Shown here: positions 14,741 through 31,378 of the stretch, one piece after another
How the letters are laid out: every line of letters begins with the position of its first letter
Numbering within the stretch: position 1 is the first letter of the stretch
Assembly (NCBI RefSeq): GCF_964204645.1
Contig: NC_134035.1
Span: 3,348,001-3,412,000, forward strand
Source: Tubulanus polymorphus
Lineage: Eukaryota > Animalia > Nemertea
Length of the DNA: 64,000 nt
Reading direction: 5' to 3'
Translations under genes and position numbers: made by a program
The notes under the pieces: generated by a model
Database searches by the model: none
Seen by the model: only the letters and a program-made list of their open reading frames with translations
What the model was told of the DNA's origin: nothing

Positions 14741-16004
14741 TGCTTACTCGGCGCCGGTCGAGTTAGTGAATTTACCGATATCTATTCGGAATAACATTCT
14801 ATTTCGACGATTTTCAACTCAATCCAGTAAACTCTGCGAAATATCTACAGTCCAAACATTAACGAGTAAGGCGCAGTTAACTGCGTGAATTTTGGCCCGA
14901 GAGATGATGAACTATCGGTTGTAACAAACAAGTTTTCTGGTCGTTAGGATCCAGTTCCACAGTGTTGTGAGTTTGAGTTGAAATAAGTTCATTTTCAATG
15001 AATATCTTGAGTTAATAACTCAGGAACCGAAGCTACGCATAGCTACGTAGGTCCTGAAGTTTGTTTTTAACGAGCTTCGACTGTAATAGCGATTCAAGCG
15101 ATTTCAACGGCCGCGCCTACTGAATCATCAGCACCGCGATCATTCACACGAAACAAAAGCAATATTTCGCATTTTGTAGATAACGTAAAATCAATCATTC
15201 AGATTAATCAACGATTCCATTAGTGGTCGTTATATCATTTTGATAAACTCAATGTGCAAAACTATCACCATAATGATGTATATATATGCAACTGTTAACC
15301 ATTTGAAGCTTTATGGTCCCCGCGCCTAAAGATATTTAGGACTAGGTGCGATACCGTTAGGCGTACCGTATACCCTGTCCAAGGATTGATATCGGAATAC
15401 TGAATTTGGCGCAGTATTAGACCTAGTTTTACAGTTGTAAGATGAACAGTTAAAACTAGTTCATTTTCGGCCAGGTTTAAACGTGACAAACTCAGCCCTA
15501 AAATTCAGTCAGATCGGAAAACGCGCTAATTCTATGACTTTTTACATATCTATAACATAAAAGACAAAAAAAAACCAAAAATGCCTACGAGTTCAACAAC
15601 TGAAAGTAATGGGGGACCTACAAAACTAGAGATCCCGCCAGATGGCGTCACTAACAGTACGTCTTAGTGGGAAAAGTTCCTTCGGTTTCGATCATCTTAA
15701 ACATACGAATCAAATATCGAATGATCGTCAGAAAGATACAACGCAATCGATTGATTTTAAGGAGAAAAGTTCGATTCAACCTCGATCGAAACGTCGAAGA
15801 AATAGAAACGCGGAAGAGTTACGAGATACTAGCGACACCTGGCGGATCCCTACGGAATCCTCGCCCACGGTAGCAGCGTCGAAGCTTCCCCATGCGCACT
15901 CGAGGGAAAAAAATATGCGCAGCACAAAACCCGATTGAAAGATTGCGAACATCGAAGACTACGGTATAATTTGGGCATCACCTACGCTAGATTCGGGACG
16001 TCAT

Positions 16005-19000
16005 CTACGCTATATTCGGGACGTCGCCGTTTCGTTTAAGGTTCGATTTATCTAACTGTAGCAGTTCGACTGCCGCTTCGTCGTGACTCTGATTATCGCT
16101 GTGATGATACGGATGCACGAACGAATGATGCGACTGATGACTTACGCTCGACATTTCCGACAGCGTGCGCTTGCGTCTGTGGTGTTGGTGGTCGCCGGCG
16201 CCGCCCGCGACGAAGTCGTGGTGGTTGTCGAGACTCTTGACCGAGCTGCCCAGTCGCAGGTGCGACGTACACTGCTCCACCTGCTCGGACACGTGAAGAT
16301 CTTTCTGACAGAAGAAATAGACGAACGACGCGCAGTAAGCCGTCGACATCGCGTTACCCGTCGACCGCACCCGATCCCTGAAAATACAACGATATCATTC
16401 GTTTTTTGAAACACATTTTCCATTTCTTCGCAGTCGGGAGATGTTTGTGTTGGATTTTCCATCTCTTCCCAGTTGTGAGGGCTGATTACTTACAGGAACC
16501 ATTCAACCGTGAACAACATGGCGACATCGGCCACCGGTAAACCGATCGACTGACAAATAATCATCACTATCACGACGCTACCGCTCGGAATGTCAGGAAG
16601 GGCGCACATCAATATCGTAATCATCAACCTAAAATATACAAAAATATTATATAATGATAATATAATAATTGAGTTTCATTTGAATAACATTAACCCTTTC
16701 AGTGCGTCTACACTGCAGCGCGGTGTATGAATCGGTGATGGATTTTGCTAGTACACCGCGCTGCGGTGTATTGATGTAATCAGTAATTAGTTTTTATCTC
16801 TCTTGAAAAATGGCAGCTCCTGTCAAACATAGTTAAATATTAGTAACTACTGATACACCGCACTGTGGTGTAGACACACTATAGTGGTATTCCCGTTATT
16901 CAACACACTAGGGGTGGAATTTTTAAAAATTTTCAAATTATCTCCAGCATTAAAGGGTATTAATTAGTCAGCACTGAAAGGGTTAACATGAATATTGACA
17001 GCAAAGAAAAATGAAGTACAGCGAGAGCCTTAGGGGCTGTACCGGTCATCTCTTGACTTACGAACTGAATTCCGATCAGCGCGTCTTATTACCTACCATA
17101 GTATAAACATACCACCGGCGTCGGGCTGCATGTCGTTTCGCTGAGCTATCAACAGCACGCTACACGTCACGAAGATGGCGCTGCCCGCTTTATTCGTCGC
17201 CGAACAGAACGGCAACACGAACCGGATCACTCGTATGTCGATGCTGTATTTTTCGCAGCCCTTGTACAGATCGGGGATCGTGACGGCTCTGAAACAATGT
17301 AAAATGATAACGTATAATAAATCGAGCCTATGACAAGCCCGCCGCATACTAGGCCATTTCTAGCCGCGGGTTGTAATATTCTTAATCACCGGCAACTTTT
17401 GTTTTTATCGCAGGACCCCAAGTTACAAGGTGACGCTGCTAGTTGTTGGCACCACTTTTCGGCCTACAATTTTGATAGACAAAAGATGCCAGTGGCCGCA
17501 CACTAGGCGATATCACAGCAGATTTATCGCAGTGCCGGGGTGTATTATTTAACCTGTTCAATTGAGTAGCAGTAACCCTTCCGTTAAAAATCAGGGGCCA
17601 GTTGCACAGTCGTAACTTAAGTCCAAAAGTGGTCTTAAATCGTAAGACAGGTCTTAAATTGATAGATTGGCTATAGAACTAAGTTGGTCTTAGACTGGTC
17701 TTAAGTCTAAGCCATGACTATGCAACCGGCCCCTGGGGCCGAAGGTTGGTTACAGTTAACCAGTGGTTAGTTGACATAGCGACAATTGAAAGTTTATTTT
17801 TACTATGGTATTTATCCGCCGGTTATCTTAAACCAACTGACCCCAGTCTATTAAACCAAAACCTATCATTTCTATACGGTTAACAACCTAAACTTAAGTT
17901 TTATTAGGTCTCAGAACAACTGATACGGAAATAGGTTTCGATCAAAGCAATACTAGCGGTAGCAAAGTACCAGTAGCAAATGCGCACTAATTTCTAAAAC
18001 CAATTACTTTATATTTCAGTCAAAAAGTATAATATATAAAAGTTAACTGCCATAATTTAACGTTATATTAAAGCCGAAATAGGTCCTGCACGTGATAGTA
18101 AAAACGACATTTGCCATTATTTACATCTCCCATTATGAACAGCTCGTGACCAACTAATGAAGGGCACTTAATCATTAATGGGTACCATTTATCATTCAGT
18201 ACTAATAGTCAGGTAGTTATACATAGACACTATACAAACTGTATGATTCAAGCCATCTAATTAAGGGACTCATCTTTTATTTATATCATCAGGTATAAGA
18301 TATTTCCCTTAGGACAATATAATGACATTACTTTAACAAAACAATTGATGGGAAAATAGTTGGAGATTAATCGTAGAGAAATCGATAAGATTTTTCCTCC
18401 ATTAGCCGCGATTGCACGGAGACAATTTTGGCCCGGGTCAAATTGGCCTGGATCGGACCTGAGTCAAAATTAGCCCGTGCCTAATTTGAGACCACGTTCG
18501 CACTTAAACCACTCACGCGATATTAAAATGTTACGTATAAATAAGATGCTGTAGCAAGTGAGGTAAGTCACTTCCAAAACCACTGAAATTTGGCACAGGC
18601 CTGGTCCGACATTTATGACCAGGCCAAATTTGGCGCCATTTGGCACAAGTGTAAATAGTTGGACCGCATCAAAATTGCGACTATATCGTTGATATTCATC
18701 CCAGCCCCTGTCCAGCCACGATTCAAAACATGTACTCGATAAACTTCAGGTTTTATCGTCGCACCTTTTTTCGAAAAGCGGAATCAACGTCTAAACAAAT
18801 AACGGCAACCTGTCGGGATGAGAAGTAAAATGTAAGGCAGGTTTTAACGACGCGACAGCTGTGCGTTGTCGGTATACTTATATATATATATATATATATA
18901 TATAGTGTGGGTGTCACAGATGTTTTGGGTAAGGTGGAATTTAGATTTGGTCGCGATCTATTATCACGACTGTATGAGAGAACGAGCGATTAGTTGGTGA

Positions 19001-22000
19001 GCTAACGATTCTAAACCCGAATTCAATCGATATCTGGTGATATCTCTCCGCGAGCTCATTGTATATCGATTAGACGTACATACTCAACACGCACTTATTA
19101 AAATTCATTGCAAGCATCTGTTCAATGAAACTGATATGCTAGGATTCAATCAAACAAATCACTATGAGCTACTACAGGATGTGCAAGTCCCGTCTCACAA
19201 AGCCTGTTAACACTAAATACCTTTTAGTTTCACTAATTTTAGCTGAGAATGTCTCCGGTAAATGGATTACATTTTTTGTTCAAACTATTCAAATATCAAT
19301 AATTTCATTAATTGGCACTATATACCAATCCGATAAGCTGAAAAACCAGTGTAAGCTCATTTTAGTTCTATAGCCAATCCAACAACTTAAGACCTGTCTA
19401 AGTTCATTTTAGTTCTATAACCAATCTAACAACTTCATTCTAAGTTCATTTTAGTTCTATAACCAATCTAACAACTTCATTCTAAGCTCATTTTAGTTCT
19501 ATAACCAATCTAACAACTTAAGACCAGTCTAAGTTCATTTTAGTTCTATAACCAATCCAACAACTTCATTCTAAGCTCATTTTAGTTCTATAACCAATCT
19601 AACAACTTCAGACCAGTTTAAGCTCATTTTAGTTTTATAACCAATCTAACAACTTAAGACCAGTCTAAGCTCATTTTAGTTCCATAATCAATCTAACACC
19701 CTAAGACCAGTCTCATGATTTAAGTGTCACTAGTAGTGACTCAGTGTTCCAAGTTCCAGGCAAGGGACACAAATAAGAATGGAGTAACTAGTGATAGCGC
19801 GGGCAACAAAAACTTAGAACCACTCTCGAGAGAAGTATTCGCTGAAGACACACTTACACGCTCGTAGTCGCGAAACTCGTCAACCAACTCTTCAAGTTGT
19901 AAACGTACAACGTGAACGGATTGCGACGCCGCGTGATGAACTCGACGGCCGGAACGAGAATCAGCTGCTGGAACGTGACGCCGACGACGACGGCAAGAAT
20001 GAACAGACCGAGTTGACGGAACGTCGCTTCGATGTTGCCGATCCCGGCGATCGCGGCCGCCGTCAGACTGGCGATACCGATCGGCGAATACCTGCGTGTG
20101 AACAAAAAAAAATAAAGAAACCTATTTTAAAGAATTCCGATTCATTTACGGCCGCCATCTTTCTCACAGTTACATGCATTAAAAATTCCCAGGCTTTTTC
20201 CAAGTTTTGATGAGTGATTTTTCAATTTTCCCATATAGAAATGAACAGATACCATCATGCTACAGTAAACATTTTAGTGGTGACTGGTTGATAAAGCTGA
20301 TTCTAAAGGAAATTGCTGAAAGTTCCCCTTGGTAGATGCAATATTCAAAATGTAAACGAATTTGCCAAATATTTCCCTGATTTGAGGACAATTTCTCAAA
20401 TTCCCAAATATTTCCTTACTGGGAATCGTTATTTCAAAATTCCCAAGTTTTTCCCGATTTCCCTGTTCTGTGGGAACCATGAGCTTCGCGTATGTTCGGA
20501 TGGAGGACTATTCAGTTCTGTAGCATCTTACCACAGGAACCAGCCGAGAATTTTGATAATCAGTTCGCTAGCCGCGTTGAAAAACATGAAGAACGGCTGC
20601 CCGACCTCGCCGCTGTTACTGGTCGCGATACCGAACACCAACGAACAAAATATTATTCCTGCAATGAAATTAAAAAAAAAATATCAAAAACTGTTACAAA
20701 ATGTTTTTTTTTTTCATGTTCAAAGTTTTTTTCTTTTAAGCGATGCCCGACTTTCTGGACGACCCAATAAATTAGGTGAACCAGACACAACCTAGATCAT
20801 ATAGTCAATGGTTCATACTTCGTGATAAGGTCTAGGTTGAACCAATGTAATCTGCGTTATGATTTATCACTTTTTATCGGTTGTCATATTGAATAAATAT
20901 TTTTCGAGTCAAGTAAAGGTCGAAAATCAAGTTTTCATTTCCTGATAATTCTTTTTTTTCAAATACCCTGTGCTGATATTTCCGAAGCTGCGCATATTAG
21001 AGTTATACCTGCATTCAAATTATTCTTTATCCTTGACCGGTATTCAAAATGGTGTCACCAGGTAGTTCAATGGAGTTGAATTGATTAATTTTAAGAAGTT
21101 TAATTAATACATTTTTAATTGTTTAACTCCAAAAGTCAAATCTAAATAACTAATTGTGGAACTGATCGTTTAAACACTATTTCCTATTCAGCATCAGGTA
21201 AATGCTTTTTAAACTATTTTAATCTATTCATTTACTGTTGATTATAATCTTGCACATCTTTTTCTAAATTCTTCATCTTTCCCCTCAAAACAGACCTCCT
21301 AAGGATACTCATAAATGTATGAACTCGAAATACTGTTCAAACATTGTTCTCTACTACTAGACGGGGATGATTACTATCTACTACCAGTGCTCGGAAACCT
21401 GAGTCAAATCTGCTGCTGCTGCTGCTGCTGCCAGACTGACTGACTTGAGTAGAAATTATATATTCTTAGATATTTGAGTTCATGAACGTTATTTCTTATA
21501 TTAGCTTTAGGTTAAACTAGTTCATTTTCACTACTACATGTTCTACCTAGATATCAGTACAAATATCCCTATAACTACATCCCTCTATAAGCTGAAAACT
21601 AATTTGTGGCTTAACCTCCCCCTATAGAGAAGTCCCTTCACATATTCATATACTCACATATTCGCTATAGATGTCCTGCTATAGAAACTATGTTTTACCG
21701 TACAACAAAACCTCAAAACACACTAAATATAGCTGCAAAGCAGCGATAACGGGTTTTCCCGAAACATTGACCACGCTTTCCACAATGCATTATATCATAC
21801 TTTATAAGTCTTACCCAACATATTAGATCCATCTGTGAACCCGATTTGACGTATATACTCGATCAGCGTTTCGTTTGTGAAGAGCGACGATACGTTCGCC
21901 GCGGCGGTGGCCGCCGTGCCGTTACTCAGAAAGTACGACGTCACGTTTTCGGCGCTGACATTGACGGCCGGCATTAGAATCGCTTTAGATTCAGAGTTGT

Positions 22001-25000
22001 ACGACGTTTGAGTCTGAAATGAGTACAGGATAGTTTTACTTGAATTCTCTATCGGTTTCTGTTTTCTTATTCAGTTTTTAATAATTCAGGGAAAATATAC
22101 CGGTACATTTTAGTCCCATGATTTCAAAAGGATATCAAGTAAACTGCGCTTCACTCTGTGAGTGTTGGGACAGCTGTAAATATTTCACCGAGTTGCGAAA
22201 AGAAATTTTTTTCTAAATGGATTTTTGTAAAATTCATTGAGGTGACCAGTATTGAATTGACCAGTACTGAGTTGACTGAGCACTGAGTAAGGAAGAGTCT
22301 ACTTCAGTAAACTATGCCTCACTCGGTAAATGTTCAGTGGGAAAATCTGGGAAATAGATCATCCAAATAATTTTCTAGTAAAATACACCGACCGGTACCA
22401 AGTAAGGAGCAGTCTACTGTTATTCCTTCAACGCATGAAATACTAAGATTCTTTTCGTGTAAATCTAAACCGATTCGATAACCGCACAGTCTAAGGGCAG
22501 ACGGCACTTGGCTATATTCATACAAATATATACAATATCTTATCAATGGTTTATTTGATTTGAAAAAAGGTGCCGGTTGTTATTAACTTACCTGTCTAAA
22601 ACAAGCAGCGATAATATTATCCGGAAAAAGATTCCTAGAAATAGAAATATAAGTCGATGTGATAACAACACGCAGAATAAGTCGTCAAGGTCACAAACCA
22701 TGTGATAATATTTATAGATTTAGAGCGAATGTGTTGGTAAATATTCAAGTGAAACCTATCAGTAGAGGGCCGGCCACTTTCTGGCCATTTACAAATTCCC
22801 CGAGTTTTCTGAGTAAATCTGCTGCAGGTGAATCGGGGAAATTTCTAGGTTTAAAATGTAACAATTCATTTCTCTTTTATTGAATCACGTTCTGATAAAG
22901 AAATGCGTGGCATTATACGAATTCCCTGAGTTTTCCAGAAGCCAGTTGCACAAAAGTTTGTTTGAGTTAACCAGTGGATCATTGACATAGTGATAATTGA
23001 AATTGCATTGTTACTATGGTATTTATCCGCCGGTTTGCTTTAACCAACTTTTGAGCAACTGGCCCCAGGTGTTTACCAAAATTCATCCAATCGCCTGTAT
23101 TTTCCCTGATATTTTCTAGATTTCTCTGAATCTGAGTTTTCCAGGTTTCCAAGGTTGTCAGTGGCCACCATAACAATTTAGACAGGGATCTATATTATCA
23201 AATCCGGTCCTACAAATGGGGTACCCGCGATACGCAGCGCACAAGGTGTCGCTAGTGTAAAGTACAACTGCACGCCGGATATTCTCTAAAAATCCAATCA
23301 AAATCGAACAATAATTTCAAGTCGAAGGAACCATATTTGTGTATACACGTTTCAGATATGACCGGTATCAATTAATCTACCTAATCGGAATGGACGGAAA
23401 AACCAGCATACATTCAACAATTACACACATACTTGTACATAATTAACTCTCAATACGGCGCACGAGCAGATGTTGCTATACACATCGCGGACAAATATTT
23501 CACGTCAATAGACAGAAAATACCGCCGAAAACAATATACGAAATTTCACTCATGAAATAAGAGCAGATGTTTCCGCGAAATCTATATCAGCGTATACATA
23601 GGTAACGAACGTATTTCATTTCGGTTTTAAATGCGAAATCTATGCAAATCTATGAGACTGTTGTTTTCCCTTATTTGACATATTTATATAGAAAGTTCAG
23701 TTTTTTATATAATATCGGGGTCTGTAATGTTTGATAGCGTTCGGGTCAGTAAACCCTGACAAGCCATCTACCTTCACTGGGACTCGAACTTAATGGCATC
23801 ATGAGAATACAAGCCTCTTAAGGACACAGGGACTCAAAGCTGATAGCGTCATGAGATTCATGGCCGCACAAAGACATAAGGATTCGAACCTATGGCATCA
23901 TGAGACTGCCTGCCTCATAAGGACACAAGGATCAAAACTGGTGGCATCATGAGATCTCATGCCGTAGCAGTCTGGGTGTGCAGTTATTCACAATGGGTGG
24001 TCTAAAAGGCCGGACATTTTTGTGAAAAACCAAATGAAGTACTCCAGATATGTATCTGATGTCGGGGGACACCCCACTCTTGACACTCTTGAGATTTTCT
24101 GAGTTTCTTTCTGGTACAATCAAGGTCCTTGTATGTATAAGCATTCTCTTTTGCTTCTTCAAGACATTTCCCTTTTATGACAACACGATCATCATCATGG
24201 CACGAATAGATTTTGAGTTAAAGTAGTCTAAGATCATACCTATATTTGATAGTATTCTTTTGTTTATAAAATCTTATTGCAATTCATGGGAAATAAAGTT
24301 ATTACTATCATTATCAAGTCTACCTGAGCATGTCGGCGAATATATCTTGCGTTTGCATCAGTTGTTTTTCTTCGCCGTTTTTCTCGATCCCAGCCGCTTC
24401 GCCATATCCTCCTACAACGCGTATAAAATATATATATAAAAATATCGACGATTCAATTGATATCTACTGATAATGGCTAAAAACTAAGCCAGGGTCCCTA
24501 CAGATTGGTTATTCCTGGAGATACAAGGAGTTTCAATGAGTTTAAAAGGAGAAAATTTCAAATTTTATGTGAATTTAACTGTCGACTCCTCCTAAATCGG
24601 TATTGTTGATCTTGGTAAACCATTAATTCGGTGGTCTTGTAAGTTAGTGAACTTTTAAGGACTCAAAAGAGTCGCAGGGATCCTGCAAGCCCTGCAAGCC
24701 GCGCAAAAAAGATACTCGCCAGTGTTTTAAAAGTTGAAACTATGAAATATGTATAGGTTTTAATTATCACCACTAAACGCAATGAAAAAAAGTGAGTTAA
24801 CACAATCGACATCGGTTAATCCATCCATCCGTCCAGGGTTAAGCAATTAATCAGTACATAGATTAGCCCAGTTTTAACGTAATGTTAATTACCTAAAATC
24901 CATATTTTCAATTATTCCGTAGAAAAATATGTCACCCTGTTGTCTCGAATTTATATGCAATACCTTATCCATCAGCTGTCGGGGGCGGGCGGGGGGTGGG

Positions 25001-28000
25001 GGGTATATTTTTCAGTTAAAAGAATTCAGGCCCCAATCATCAATCTACTAAATCTGTACATTTCATGTATTCTTTTTGTAATTTTGTATTCCTTTCAATT
25101 AATGATGAAACAAATCTTATACCATAGTACATTCAAACAACTCAACATTTAGATTGTTCGGTTAGTAGTTTATGGATTTGAATCATAAAGGTGTTTTAAA
25201 GATAATAGCCCAGCCAAAAAGCGTAGCACTGGGCCTCCCGTGCTACACAATGGATATACATCCCCGATGGCTTATATTTTGAGGTATATCAATGCTTTAC
25301 AATGAGTACATTATTTATTTAGCTGAACCAATCATAGATCGGTATGGTATACTCCATGTTTATTTATTCTTGAACAGCCGAGTCCACGCTTTAGGGAAAT
25401 TTAGTGAAATAAGCAATAACTGTTTGATTTTATGCGCGATATAAATCTCAACAAATTTCCCCGATTTTCCCCTGATTTTTAGCCTCTTTCTTTTTAAACA
25501 AAATTCCCTGACTTATCCCGGATTTCCCGTAATTCCCGGTAAGAGCGAACCTCGTTGATATATATGTAAATACTTGAATTAAAATATGCAAAGCAGTGTC
25601 TGAATTTAAGGGACTATCCGGTATATATTAAAAATCTAGCCGTTATAATATCAAAGCTTCGGGAAAAGCTGAACACATTGCAAAGCGCGACACATTTTCT
25701 AAGTGTAGCGTTCATAAATTGTAGTCGCTTTTGATAAATGAGATTGTCGCCGCGTACCTTGTCTAATCGTCAACGACAGTATGATTCCGATCAGCGTACT
25801 GGTAGCGTTAGTTACCATCACGTAAGCCAGGGTCATTACGCTTACTTTACCGTTCGAACGGGAATCCAACGATGCTGCCCCTAAAAAAAAAAAAAAAAAT
25901 TAAGGCGTGTTTTTAGGAAATATCTCAAACGAATCAAATCGGATAGACGTAGAGTTTCATATCGAAATTCGCACTCGCAACTCAAGTCTAGACTCAGACC
26001 ATTCGGATTTCAGAGTTTATCACGAATCAATACTGTTCTACCCATAGGAACGTTGACCGAAGCTTGTTTTAAGTCATAAGGGGCCGGTTGCATAGTCGAA
26101 GCTCAGATTCAAGACCGGTCTAAGACCAACTATAGTTCTATAGCCAATCCAACAACTTAAGACCGCTCTTAGGATTTAGGACCATTTTTGGACTTCAGTC
26201 ACGACTGCGCAACCAGCCCCGGTTTATTGTAATTTGAAGTAGACTGGTCTGGAGTTGTTAGATTTTCTAAAGAGCCGTCTTTAGACTAAGACCGTTTTTT
26301 TTAAGACATCATGATCCAGTTCCACAGTTCTGAGTTAAGATTTGACTCTCGAGTTAACTCATTGAAAATGAACTAACTCTAACTCACAACTGTGGAACTG
26401 GGTCATCATAGTTACATCTTTCTAACATTTGACCAGTCTCAAGGCTAAGGCCGGGTTTTTTAGTTGTTATCAAATCAAAATTGGACTAACGTTGAACTAA
26501 AATTGATATCAACGCTACAGGCTCAAGACCAGCATTCAGTCGTGCGACTACAGAACCAAATCGAGCTTAAGACTGGTCAAAAAATCTTCAGTACTGTAAC
26601 AGTTGTAACAGCGCGAAATACTGGGCTTGGGTCGATGAATACTATATTGCTGCATGTATGTGACAAGCTGTATAACCACTGGCCAACTGGATTAGTTATA
26701 TTGGCCTACTGGTTAGCAGGCTTGTTTTGTCGGTACCTGGGTTCAATCTCCGGTGAGGGCGTGCAATCTAACTGCATCACTCCCTCATATTGTTACAACT
26801 ACATAATACTTACCTGATATTATACAAGACACGACAAGTGGAATGATCATCATTTTCAGCAAACGAAGAAATATGTCTCCGGGAATACCTAGAAATAGTA
26901 AACAACATTGAGCGGTTAACGAGTGATTTGCTAGAGATGTATTTTAGTCTTGGCCATGACTTCGCAACTGGTTCACGAGTCTGAAGCTAAGAGCCTCGAA
27001 TCACGTTGAACAAAGGTTATCTGCAGGACAAAACCAACAACCATGTTATATAGTTCATCAGACATGAGCGGTTAATTATATAATCGCATCTGATGATGAA
27101 TTCGTGAACGTTAATCCTGTGAAATGGGAGCATTTCGAATCGGAATAATTATACGCATAATAATCATCACGCGCAAAAACTGGGGGGGGCGGGTCTAGAA
27201 AATTTGAAACGGCGAGTCGCGCTTCAAATTTCGAAAAACATTTATGCTTTTAGATGGCGTTTCCTGCATTTAAAATCGTCATTTTAAAAAGGAAAGGAAT
27301 TCCGGTTTTATTCGTTACAATTTCGTGATGTTTATTTCATCAACGCTCAATTGAAAAATTTGGTGCCTCTGAATCATCCCCAAACCCAGAATCGGACTGA
27401 TAAAACAGCCTGAATCAGAGGTACAAGCACCTGGTCAGTCGGTATTCACTACAGAACGCCATTCTACAGTCCAGACAGTCCAGACTGAACAGAATTCCTT
27501 CCACAGTCCAGACTGAACAGAACTCCTTCCACAGTCCAGACTGAACAGAATTCCTTCCACAGTCCAGACTGGAACAGAATTCCTTCCACAGACCAGACTG
27601 GAACAGAATTCCTTCCACAGTCAAGACTGGACAGAATTCCTTCCACAGTACAGACTGAACAGAATTCCTTCCACAGTCCAGACTGAACAGAATTCCTTCC
27701 ACAGTCCAGACTGGACAGAATTCCTTCCACAGTCCAGACTGGACAGAATTCCTTCCACAGTCCAGACTGGACAGAATTCCTTCCACAGTCCAGACTGAAC
27801 AGAATTCCTCAAACCACCAGGTCTATTACAGACTTTATTTTGTTGACTTAGATCTTGAAGTTTGATATACAAACACAAAGGTCGAAATTGCTCGAAACGA
27901 CCACTTGAAATACCACTTGTTAAAGGTGGTTGAAATTTGAACTTCGGTTTTTCTTGTTTCACACATTAAACTACTGACCGATATTCTCGATGCCGAAGAC

Positions 28001-31000: not shown

Positions 31001-31378
31001 TTCTTCGCCTGAAGTCATCGACCTGATTACACCGAACCTAGTCTGAACCTGTGAACCTCCTCATTAAAAATAATCACATGATATCTAATTAGGTCTCTCG
31101 AAAAAACAAAGCCCACACTTCAGATCCGACTTACCGATCCACATCAAAGCATCAGGTGACGGTTTGTAGGGTCGCACGACGAAACCGATGATAAATCCGA
31201 AAACTATTCCCACAGCAGTTAGAATCAGTAACAAATTCTCTTTGAGATTTTTAATGATGTTGTCTTTGGAACAATCACACGTGCAGCAAGAAGGTTTCTT
31301 TTTGTCGTCGTGATGAGGCGGGTCGCCGTCCATCATAACAACTCCTATTTTGCTGTCTTCGAATTCATCGGTAGCCAT
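16005..31378 (-). CDS. SLC1 / dicarboxylate-amino acid:cation symporter family (EAAT-like) transporter, divergent; ~610 aa (long-exon isoform)
   Basis: Exons, all GT-AG and phase-consistent: 31135-31378, 26814-26888, 25758-25880, 24324-24411, 22592-22634, 21815-22013, 20532-20658, 19858-20091, 17097-17288, 16494-16628, 16005-16377. Family motifs: GIPGDIFLRLLKMMIIPLVVS, SLDSRSNGK, RNLFPDNIIAACFRQ, DGSNMLG, WYSPIGIASL, IDIRVIRFVLP, EWFLDRVRS. Five N-glycosylation sequons lie in the large extracellular loop. Confidence 0.93.
16694..16982. mobile_element. piggyBac-like MITE (TTAA TSD, TIR CCCTTTCAGTGC)
   Basis: ttaa|ccctttcagtgc ... gcactgaaaggg|ttaa. An inverted copy of the same family is at 42289-42551. 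Confidence 0.8.
17594..17733. mobile_element. MITE, TIR GGGGCCRGTTGCA (second copy ~26080-26220, opposite orientation)
   Basis: ggggccagttgcacagtc ... gactatgcaaccggcccc. The internal sequence is shared with the 26080 copy. Confidence 0.7.
19348..19712. repeat. Minisatellite, ~41-47 bp unit (aagctcattttagttctataaccaatctaacaacttaagaccagtct), ~8 copies
   Basis: Direct tandem repeats in an SLC1 intron. Confidence 0.9.
23779..23962. repeat. Degenerate ~50-bp tandem repeat (~4 copies) with a B-box-like core
   Basis: Unit ggattcgaacctatggcatcatgaga...aggacaca. The minus strand reads gatgccataGGTTCGAATCC. Confidence 0.65.
27465..27808. repeat. Minisatellite, ~28-bp unit (cagactgaacagaattccttccacagtc), ~12 copies
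   Basis: Contiguous near-perfect tandem units with no spacers. They account for the repetitive ORFs at 27415-27962. Confidence 0.95.
30670..30960. repeat. Degenerate ~24-bp tandem repeat (gactaaactgcagtccagttact-like); a related array lies at ~48110-48310
   Basis: Recurrent ttactgactaaa...agtcca units at both sites. Confidence 0.6.

What the first reader, a model, noticed from the sequence alone, without database searches (positions are those of the whole stretch)
16005..20091. SLC1 transporter with the Na+-coupling residues replaced: NMDGT becomes NKAGS and the TM8 Asp becomes Thr, while substrate residues are kept
Seen: the spliced protein reads TM7 VLPFCSATNKAGSAIFVT, HP1 SFATTSVAVTIP, HP2 MCALPDIPSGS and TM8 EWFLDRVRSTGNAMSTAY. 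Established (GltPh numbering): D312 binds Na3, D405 binds Na1, M311 lines Na2, the EAAT Glu at position 318 couples H+/K+, and D394/R397/N401 bind the acidic amino acid. By my manual alignment the changes are D312A, D405T, M311K, 318V, S278V and G354D, while D394, R397 and N401 are retained. The reading frame and all splice sites are intact, which argues against decay. Inference: a Na+-independent (facilitative or exchange) Asp/Glu carrier in which the Lys ammonium replaces the Na2 ion. It could instead be a non-transporting sensor or anion channel. Divergent invertebrate SLC1 clades exist, so this may be a shared but uncharacterised subfamily.
Basis: partly seen in the sequence, partly recalled or inferred. 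Interest (0 to 1): 0.8.

Follow-up and report, generated by a model that had tools for sequence, protein, structure and literature searches.

The report
Divergent ribbon-worm SLC1 transporter lacking sodium ligands
This is a real, expressed glutamate-transporter-family gene of the ribbon worm Tubulanus polymorphus that has lost both acidic sodium-binding residues but kept the substrate-binding ones, and it is the most altered sampled member of a large, apparently unstudied group of such transporters found in molluscs, annelids, nemerteans, rotifers and flatworms.

Summary
The finding covers the last four of 11 exons of a minus-strand gene (window 31378-16005). The gene encodes the public 610-aa protein P0023, annotated 'excitatory amino acid transporter-like' in Tubulanus polymorphus.

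- **Motifs.** HMMER alignment to human EAAT2, EAAT3 and ASCT1 places NKAGS on NMDGT, FV on YE, and S-T on the TM8 G-D. D394, R397 and N401 (GltPh numbering) are kept.
- **Gene integrity.** All introns are GT-AG. A spliced contig in one public run joins exons 8, 9 and 10 exactly as read, and the genome holds no second copy of the last exon.
- **Fold.** AlphaFold gives a confident SLC1 fold, with TM7 unwound at N410-K411.
- **Not an isolated oddity.** 111 spiralian SLC1 proteins share a remodelled cation nexus: position 311 is A or K/R, 405 is His, 318 is Ile, and 93 is Asn. The exact K/A/T triple is unique to this gene among them.
- **Relatives.** The closest relative (Lineus, 52% identity) has S-R-N-G-S with His. 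The scan had already flagged a Tubulanus paralog with NRNGS (s1-496708); I found it also ends TM8 in S-T.

Na+-independent or weakly coupled acidic-amino-acid carriage is plausible but untested. Lys standing in for Na2 is geometrically reasonable speculation.

The parts
31135..31378 (-). Exon 1 with start codon (ATG at 31378); N-terminal tail and TM1
   Evidence: the translation equals P0023 residues 1-81; donor gtaagt.
26814..26888 (-). Exon 2 (TM2, IPGD...LKMM motif)
   Evidence: Pfam SDF positions 28-51.
25758..25880 (-). Exon 3 (TM3). T130 (codon 25812-25810) corresponds to GltPh T92; N131 (25809-25807) corresponds to S93.
24324..24411 (-). Exon 4
22592..22634 (-). 43-nt micro-exon (NLFPDNIIAACFRQ)
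21815..22013 (-). Exon 5: extracellular loop rich in N-x-S/T sites
   Evidence: The AF2 model shows low pLDDT at residues 217-234.
20532..20658 (-). Exon 6 (TM4c/TM5 start)
   Evidence: SDF positions 138-177.
19858..20091 (-). Exon 7 (TM5, TM6, first arm of HP1)
   Evidence: 33.3 bits; EAAT2, E=8e-12.
17097..17288 (-). Exon 8: HP1 tip and TM7. Codons: N410 at 17194-17192, K411 at 17191-17189, A412 at 17188-17186, G413-S414 at 17185-17180, V418 at 17170-17168.
   Evidence: A spliced contig in run X4 covers the exon. The NKAGS codons show no variant in runs X1, X3 or X4.
16494..16628 (-). Exon 9: HP2, with D454 (codon 16594-16592) at the GltPh G354 position
16005..16377 (-). Exon 10: TM8, a His-rich C-terminal tail and the stop codon. 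Codons: D488 at 16376-16374, R491 at 16367-16365, N495 at 16355-16353, S498-T499 at 16346-16341.
16665..17021 (.). High-copy repeat inside intron 8. It is not part of the protein.
   Evidence: word depth of 10^3 to 10^5, against about 25 in the flanks.

Best explanation
Shown: an intact, spliced, expressed 11-exon gene of the nemertean Tubulanus polymorphus encodes a 610-aa SLC1-fold protein, P0023. It belongs to a strongly supported spiralian-only SLC1 clade that sits apart from canonical EAAT/ASCT. In that clade the cation nexus is rebuilt: GltPh M311 becomes A or K/R, D405 becomes His, the EAAT proton/K+ Glu becomes Ile or Val, S93 becomes Asn, and T314 becomes Ser. The substrate ligands D394, R397, T398 and N401 stay nearly invariant. 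This gene is the extreme case, because both acidic cation ligands are gone (D312A, D405T) and a Lys sits at position 311.

Inferred: the protein still binds an acidic amino acid such as Asp or Glu and moves it by the elevator mechanism. It cannot run the canonical 3 Na+/1 H+/1 K+ cycle. It most likely works as a Na+-independent or weakly coupled carrier or exchanger. In this reading the fixed positive charge of K411 does the electrostatic and HP2-gate-closing work that bound Na+ (chiefly Na2) does in EAATs. K411 may pair with D454 at the HP2 tip or with the substrate carboxylate.
For: - Identity and splicing. Every exon is a substring of P0023 and all introns are GT-AG.
- Expression: run X4 holds a 594-nt contig joining 16172-16376, 16493-16626 and 17095-17288 with CT..AC ends. 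The genome has only one copy of exon 10, so this is not a retrocopy.
- Constraint: 1 variant in 700 exonic nt against 9 in 339 unique intronic nt (Fisher p=3e-4). The end branch is 0.72, equal to the tree median.
- Fold: AF2 gives pLDDT above 90 over the transport domain and a TM7 helix break at 410-411. Foldseek TM-score reaches 0.91 (normalised to the target) against EAAT/ASCT structures.
- Clade: SH-aLRT 100 for 54 rows. The state table for 111 proteins is.
- Three other Tubulanus paralogs also deviate in TM7: NRNGS with TM8 S-T, NADGS with TM8 S-H, and NIAGT with TM8 T-D.
- Site chemistry from the literature: Na1 uses the D405 side chain, and Na2 uses backbone carbonyls plus the Met sulfur (PMC8431971). 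E374 and the YE motif are required for K+/H+ coupling (PMC10160106). Bacterial H+-coupled relatives carry M311L and D405N, and a reconstructed Na+-independent intermediate exists (PMC12668577).
- Geometry (my inference): the Lys N-zeta lies about 2.5 A beyond the position of the Met S-delta, which is roughly the sulfur-to-Na2 distance.
Against: - There are no functional data for any member of the clade.
- The Na2 site is built mostly from backbone carbonyls, and T92 and N310 are kept, so some Na+ binding cannot be excluded.
- Reddy et al. (PMC12668577) show that site residues alone do not predict coupling. M314A in GltTk keeps its stoichiometry (PMC8431971).
- The animal is marine, so a large Na+ gradient is available.
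- The K/A/T triple is not conserved in the nearest relative.
- The association between a basic residue at 311 and loss of His405 is only suggestive. There are 5 loss events among 26 rows against 4 among 81 (nominal Fisher p=0.04), and the phylogenetically independent-pairs test is underpowered (p=1).
- The K411-D454 pairing was not measurable.
Confidence: 0.55

Rival explanations
1. The protein is still a Na+-coupled transporter with reduced or rearranged stoichiometry. It would bind one or two Na+ through backbone carbonyls, T130, N131, N410 and the S498/T499 hydroxyls. In this reading K411 tunes affinity or substrate selectivity and does not replace an ion.
For: Na2 is formed by four backbone carbonyls, and M314A keeps its stoichiometry (PMC8431971). 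T92 and N310 are retained. Site residues are poor predictors of coupling (PMC12668577). The habitat is marine.
Against: Both acidic ligands of Na1 and Na3 are absent. A cationic Lys next to Na2 would repel a bound Na+. The E374 equivalent is Val, so the K+/H+ steps of the canonical cycle are lost.
Confidence: 0.2
2. The protein is a non-transporting SLC1 derivative. It would be a substrate-gated anion channel, in the manner of EAAT4/5 taken to the extreme, or an amino-acid sensor, with the elevator cycle uncoupled or stalled.
For: EAATs have an intrinsic anion conductance (established knowledge). Substrate ligands are kept while the coupling ligands are lost. A long His-rich cytoplasmic tail, residues about 537-590, could be a signalling or metal-binding module.
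Against: The whole transport and scaffold architecture, and the hairpins, are conserved across 111 clade members. Nothing specific points to channel-only function.
Confidence: 0.12
3. The main effect of the substitutions is a changed substrate. K411 lies where the Met contacts the substrate and would bind an extra negative group, for example on a di- or tricarboxylate or on a sulfo- or phospho-amino acid. Ion coupling would be a secondary matter.
For: The M311 side chain makes van der Waals contact with L-aspartate (PMC12668577). HP1 S278V/S279A and HP2 G354D alter the pocket. An insect SLC1 homolog has dicarboxylate selectivity (PMC3737229, title and abstract only).
Against: D394, which binds the amino group, and R397 are retained, as in Asp/Glu carriers. 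There is no direct evidence for another substrate.
Confidence: 0.08
4. The gene is a decaying or functionless paralog drifting after duplication.
For: The K/A/T state is unique. Pfam scores are the lowest among the roughly 8 SLC1 loci of this genome. One non-synonymous variant, S393C, was seen.
Against: The 610-codon frame is intact and all ten introns are canonical. The mRNA is correctly spliced. Exons carry far fewer variants than introns. The branch length is at the median. The fold is confident. The substrate ligands are invariant.
Confidence: 0.04

Closest known systems
Human EAAT1-3 (SLC1A3/2/1), e.g. PDB 7XR4, 6S3Q
   Same: Same fold, with Foldseek TM-score of 0.85-0.91 normalised to the target. 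Identity is about 30% over residues 44-522. The HP1/TM7/HP2/TM8 architecture matches, TM7 is unwound at the same place, and the TM8 D/R/N substrate ligands are the same.
   Different: NMD(366-368) is NKA here. YE(373-374) is FV. D455 is Thr and G454 is Ser. The HP1 serines are partly replaced, and the HP2 tip Gly is Asp. The canonical Na1 and Na3 carboxylates and the H+/K+ Glu are therefore all missing.
ASCT1/2 (SLC1A4/5) neutral amino-acid exchangers
   Same: They also lack the coupling Glu (it is Gln) and work as exchangers without K+ counter-transport. The best exon-8 hit is ASCT1.
   Different: ASCTs keep NMDG and the TM8 Asp, and they are Na+-dependent. They replace R447 by Thr or Cys. 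Here R491 is kept, which points to an acidic substrate.
Bacterial H+-coupled glutamate/dicarboxylate transporters (GltP/GltT type) and the reconstructed Na+-independent ancestor AncInt (PDB 9BGY/9BGZ/9BH0)
   Same: These are precedents within the family for transport without Na+. The signature M311L and D405N also removes the Met and the Na1 Asp (PMC12668577).
   Different: Their T92 becomes hydrophobic, and S279E is the proposed protonation site. Here T92 is kept, residue 279 is Ala, residue 312 is Ala, residue 311 is a cationic Lys, and residue 405 is Thr.
Spiralian divergent SLC1 clade (e.g. Tubulanus P0001, Lineus P0002/P0121, Owenia P0003/P0218, many molluscs), all annotated only as 'EAAT-like'
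   Same: Shares S93N, T314S, 318 as Ile/Val, G404S, the HP1 T-S-x-A pattern and the HP2 P-x-[VI]-P-S pattern. P0023 is sister to Lineus P0121 with 100% support.
   Different: 89 of 111 members have His at 405 and 61 of 111 keep D312. This gene has Thr and Ala respectively, and an Asp at the HP2 tip that is shared only with Lineus P0121.
Tethered-cation transporters of the LeuT fold (ApcT Lys158, CaiT Arg262) - from my own knowledge, not tested here
   Same: They illustrate the concept of a basic side chain occupying a former Na+ site in Na+-independent relatives.
   Different: The fold is unrelated. No such case has been described for SLC1 in the papers I could search.

Membership tests
SLC1 / Pfam PF00375 (sodium:dicarboxylate symporter family) | Significant match to the SDF profile | tested here: met
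   exons 7, 8 and 9 score 33.3, 32.6 and 28.3 bits on their own (cut-off 27.9). P0023 carries PF00375.
SLC1 / Pfam PF00375 | Eight TM helices plus two re-entrant hairpins, with TM7 unwound in the middle | tested here: met
   One search shows a helix break at 410-411, the HP1 loop at 376-378 and the HP2 loop at 452-457. One search gives TM-scores of 0.83-0.91 (normalised to the target) against inward-facing EAAT2, EAAT3 and ASCT2 structures.
SLC1 / Pfam PF00375 | Conserved NMDGT motif in TM7 | tested here: not met
   the motif is N-K-A-G-S. Only N and G are kept.
EAAT subfamily (Na+/H+/K+-coupled glutamate transporters) | Acidic Na+ ligands D368 and D455 (hEAAT3 numbering; GltPh D312 and D405) | tested here: not met
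   the residues are A412 and T499.
EAAT subfamily | YE(373-374) motif with the proton/K+-coupling Glu | tested here: not met
   the residues are F417-V418.
EAAT subfamily | TM8 substrate ligands D444, R447 and N451 | tested here: met
   the residues are D488, R491 and N495.
EAAT subfamily | Na+-dependent, K+-stimulated uptake of Glu/Asp | not testable with these tools
   This needs flux or electrophysiology assays.
Spiralian divergent SLC1 clade (defined here) | Falls inside the clade on a maximum-likelihood tree | tested here: met
   the clade has SH-aLRT 100, and P0023 pairs with P0121 at SH-aLRT 100. This was a quick search only, with no bootstrap.
Spiralian divergent SLC1 clade (defined here) | Signature states S93N, T314S, 318 Ile/Val, G404S | tested here: met
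   the residues are N131, S414, V418 and S498.
Spiralian divergent SLC1 clade (defined here) | His at the D405 position (89 of 111 members) | tested here: not met
   the residue is T499. This state occurs in only one of the 111 proteins. The unannotated Tubulanus paralog also has Thr.

The most novel reading that the evidence does not exclude
Spiralian animals carry a whole clade of SLC1 carriers in which bound Na+ ions have been replaced by protein-borne positive charges, either His at the Na1 Asp position or Lys/Arg at the Na2 Met position. These would be the first tethered-cation, Na+-independent SLC1 transporters in animals. This Tubulanus gene would be the end-point of the series, with both acidic ligands gone and a Lys-Asp pair (K411-D454) closing the HP2 gate in place of Na2.
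Probability: 0.25. Interest if true: 0.8.

Novelty: new variant of a known kind. Interest (0 to 1): 0.6.

Why it matters
To my knowledge, every animal SLC1 transporter characterised so far (EAATs, ASCTs, insect and nematode homologs) depends on Na+ bound at sites built around the NMD motif and the TM8 Asp. This gene is a natural, expressed, conserved-fold protein that keeps the substrate site but has neither acidic ligand, and it carries a cationic residue in the motif.

It sits in a clade of more than 100 proteins that sample many intermediate states (A/D/H, R/D/H, A/N/H, K/S/Q and others). That clade is a ready-made evolutionary series for asking how ion coupling is set in elevator transporters. 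It complements the ancestral-reconstruction work done on bacterial homologs.

There is also a practical warning. 'EAAT-like' annotations in molluscs, annelids, nemerteans, rotifers and flatworms should not be read as Na+-coupled glutamate clearance.

Tried and rejected
- **Exon 10 against PDB sequences.** Exon 10 alone gave no hit, because the TM8 segment is too short within 123 aa. The full-length public protein settled the TM8 register instead.
- **Joining exons.** Exons were searched one by one by reference. After that I used the public protein P0023, which the word search returned, by its id. Each exon translation was checked as a substring of it.
- **Retrocopy as the source of the spliced contig.** Rejected. 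Exon 10 has a single genomic place.
- **Alternative exon boundaries that would restore NMDG or GD.** Rejected for exons 8-10. The junctions of exons 1-7, including the 7/8 junction, rest on the GT-AG sites and on the RefSeq model only.
- **Co-evolution of basic-311 with loss of His405.** The raw association is 15 of 19 non-His rows carrying K/R at 311, and 5 of 9 loss events falling in the K/R background. The independent-pairs test has only 4-5 contrasts and gives p=1. I therefore treat the association as suggestive only.
- **dN/dS.** Not attempted. The nearest relative is 52% identical, so synonymous sites are saturated.
- **Position of the Lys side chain.** Not measurable, because the structure tool returns no coordinates.
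- **Literature.** Six full-text searches found no description of this clade or of its ion-site changes. They covered NMDGT with invertebrates, SLC1 with Lophotrochozoa or spiralian, Aplysia or mollusc with sodium-independent, and the motif strings themselves. The oyster CgEAAT paper (PMC11545548) does not discuss ion sites.
- **Large representative search.** Not run, because relatives were already found and that library carries no names.


Full report
**What is at the locus.** The finding's coordinates (16005-20091) hold the last four exons of a minus-strand gene that spans window 31378-16005. Six-frame reading and inspection of the boundaries gave 11 coding exons totalling 1833 nt, which is 610 codons plus a stop. 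All ten introns have GT..AG ends.

I searched the exons one at a time, by reference. Pfam PF00375 (SDF) matches exons 2, 6, 7, 8 and 9, and exons 7-9 exceed the gathering score on their own. Instead, a word search seeded with an intronless paralog from the same genome returned a public protein, P0023. It is 610 aa and NCBI names it 'excitatory amino acid transporter-like [Tubulanus polymorphus]'. Every exon translation is a contiguous substring of P0023. The organism is therefore the palaeonemertean Tubulanus polymorphus. The window is G000:C11:3348001-3412000 of a 268-Mb assembly.

- phmmer of exon 8 against all PDB sequences aligns N-K-A-G-S with N-M-D-G-T/A of human EAAT3 and ASCT1.
- P0023 aligns with human EAAT2 over residues 44-522 at E=5e-87. 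In that alignment F417-V418 sit under Y-E. In TM8, D488, R491 and N495 sit under the conserved D, R and N, while S498-T499 sit under G-D.
- In the TM3 Y-Y-x-x-T-T stretch (Y-Y-M-S-T-T in EAAT2) the Thr equivalent to GltPh T92 is kept (T130), and the next residue is Asn (N131).
- The HP1 serines read T-S-V-A, and the HP2 tip Gly is Asp (D454).
- The numbering equivalences come from papers read here: NMD 366-368 and YE 373-374 in hEAAT3 (PMC10160106), N310-M311-D312 and the D405N/M311L signature in GltPh numbering (PMC12668577), and the ligands of Na1 and Na2 (PMC8431971).

**The gene is alive.**
- Four public runs from one study hold the stretch. I laid them on 15900-17400, staying within the 6,000-letter limit.
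- One run (X4) contains a 594-nt contig at depth 25 that joins 16172-16376, 16493-16626 and 17095-17288. The skipped parts have CT..AC ends on the plus strand, which is GT..AG on the gene strand. After the stated 1- and 2-base ambiguities, the cuts are exactly the exon 10/9 and 9/8 boundaries.
- The contig runs on for 61 nt beyond 17288, as expected if it continues into exon 7.
- Exon 10 occurs once in the assembly, so the spliced form is mRNA and not a retrocopy.
- The NKAGS and S-T codons show no variant in either sample.
- Across the laid stretch there is one exonic variant in 700 nt (17245 T>A, Ser393Cys, in the loop before TM7). Unique intron sequence carries nine SNPs and one indel in 339 nt (Fisher p=3e-4). 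These numbers are small and come from contigs.
- AlphaFold2 with a 56-sequence alignment gives mean pLDDT 78, above 90 across most of the transport domain. TM7 breaks at residues 410-411, and both hairpins are formed.
- Foldseek finds EAAT2, EAAT3 and ASCT2, with TM-scores up to 0.91 normalised to the target. The best matches are inward-facing states.

**The gene is one member of a large divergent clade.**
- A PF00375 scan of the animal's own genome shows about eight SLC1 loci. Four have canonical NMDGT...YEA in TM7.
- The other four deviate:
  - this gene;
  - an intronless gene on C5 (P0001) with N-A-D-G-S and TM8 ...S-H;
  - a gene at C11:11.48 Mb with N-R-N-G-S and TM8 ...S-T;
  - a gene at C2:4.29 Mb with N-I-A-G-T that keeps YEA and the TM8 Asp.
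- Word searches with P0001, P0023 and the Lineus relative returned more than 100 proteins with the same remodelled pattern. They come from molluscs, the annelid Owenia, nemerteans, rotifers (Brachionus, Seison) and tapeworms.
- In a 66-protein maximum-likelihood tree (quick search, SH-aLRT only), 54 of them form one clade with support 100, separate from canonical EAAT/ASCT. P0023 is sister to Lineus longissimus P0121 (52% identity, support 100). Its end branch of 0.72 equals the tree median.

State counts over 111 non-canonical proteins:

| GltPh position | States |
|---|---|
| 311 | A 63, R 22, C 10, K 6 |
| 312 | D 61, N 35 |
| 405 | H 89, Q 8 |
| 318 | I 97 |
| 93 | N 90 |
| 314 | S 105 |
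| 394 | D 108 |
| 397 | R 107 |
| 401 | N 84, S 22 |

The substrate ligands are held while the cation ligands have been rewritten. The K/A/T triple of this gene occurs once among the 111. Its sister has R/N/H and shares only the HP2-tip Asp.

**A weak pattern worth testing.** His405 has been lost in nine separate groups on the tree. Five of these lie in the K/R-311 background (26 rows) and four lie among the other 81 rows (nominal Fisher p=0.04). The phylogenetically independent-pairs test has too few contrasts and gives p=1. This would fit a rule that at least one potentially cationic side chain, His405 or K/R311, stays in the former ion nexus. It is not demonstrated.

**Mechanism.**
- Established from the papers read: Na1 needs the D405 carboxylate. 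Na2 is four backbone carbonyls plus the Met sulfur (PMC8431971). The Glu of the YE motif is required for K+/H+ coupling (PMC10160106).
- From established knowledge of the family, not from these papers: the D312 carboxylate is a ligand of Na3.
- With A412, T499 and V418 the canonical 3 Na+/1 H+/1 K+ cycle cannot operate as known.
- Transport without Na+ has precedent within the family. Bacterial H+-coupled members carry M311L and D405N, and a reconstructed intermediate is Na+-independent (PMC12668577).
- My inference is an acidic-amino-acid carrier or exchanger that is Na+-independent or weakly coupled, with K411 supplying a fixed charge near the Na2 position. The Lys N-zeta reaches about 2.5 A beyond the Met sulfur position, which is close to the sulfur-to-Na2 distance. 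K411 could pair with D454 at the HP2 tip.
- Cautions: M-to-A mutants keep their stoichiometry (PMC8431971), site residues alone do not predict coupling (PMC12668577), and no member of the clade has been assayed.

**Prior knowledge.** Six full-text searches found no paper describing this clade or its ion-site changes. A 2026 metazoan survey of EAATs and an oyster CgEAAT study, searched by keyword, do not discuss them. That is absence in the library searched, not proof of absence. The scan itself had already flagged the NRNGS paralog on other DNA of this genome (s1-496708).

**Verdict.** Ion independence and the role of the Lys remain to be tested.

Noticed in passing
L001 (G000:C5:19176047-19177342), ORF L001:1288-2970:-: An intronless 561-aa SLC1 gene (P0001) of the same divergent clade, with TM7 N-A-D-G-S and TM8 ending S-H. 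Its Lineus relative P0002 is 66% identical. An intronless gene among multi-exon paralogs suggests an old retrogene that became the main-type member.
   Followed up: partly
L015/L031 (G000:C11:11483850-11485390 and downstream): A third divergent paralog with TM7 N-R-N-G-S, HP2 tip Gly, and TM8 D-R-L-R-S-T-S-N-V-L-S-T, i.e. the same Thr at the D405 position as this gene. It is about 45% identical to all four annotated nemertean clade members, and no matching protein turned up in the protein searches. The scan flagged it earlier as s1-496708.
   Followed up: partly
L032 (G000:C2:4292088-4294281): An SLC1 paralog of the canonical branch (YEA and the TM8 Asp are kept) whose NMDGT reads N-I-A-G-T. 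This is an independent loss of the Na3 Asp in the same genome.
   Followed up: partly
window 16665-17021 (intron 8): A very high-copy repeat. Logan contig word depth is 10^3 to 10^5, against about 25 in the flanks, with many partial joints and loose ends. It is probably a SINE- or MITE-like element.
   Followed up: no
window 19340-19700 (intron 7), and 17600-17720: A tandem array of an approximately 40-45-nt unit (…cattttagttctataaccaatctaacaactt…). An inverted, related stretch lies about 2 kb away in the same intron.
   Followed up: no
window 27418-27965 (intron 1, minus-strand reading): A tandem repeat that stays open in all three minus-strand frames and reads as repeated …GRNSVQSGLWKEFCSVWTVEGILFSLDC… units. 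It looks like a satellite inside the 4-kb first intron and not like coding sequence.
   Followed up: no
window 16005-16270 (P0023 residues about 525-610) and 31270-31300 (residues 29-37): The C-terminal tail is disordered (pLDDT below 50) and His-rich, with about 13 His in 55 residues. The N-terminus carries a C-C-T-C-D-C cluster. Neither has a counterpart in EAATs; they may be metal-binding, lipidation or regulatory modules.
   Followed up: no
window 17245: T>A on the plus strand (Ser393Cys in the loop between HP1 and TM7) at full depth in runs X1, X3 and X4, i.e. in both samples. The assembly base may be the minor allele.
   Followed up: partly
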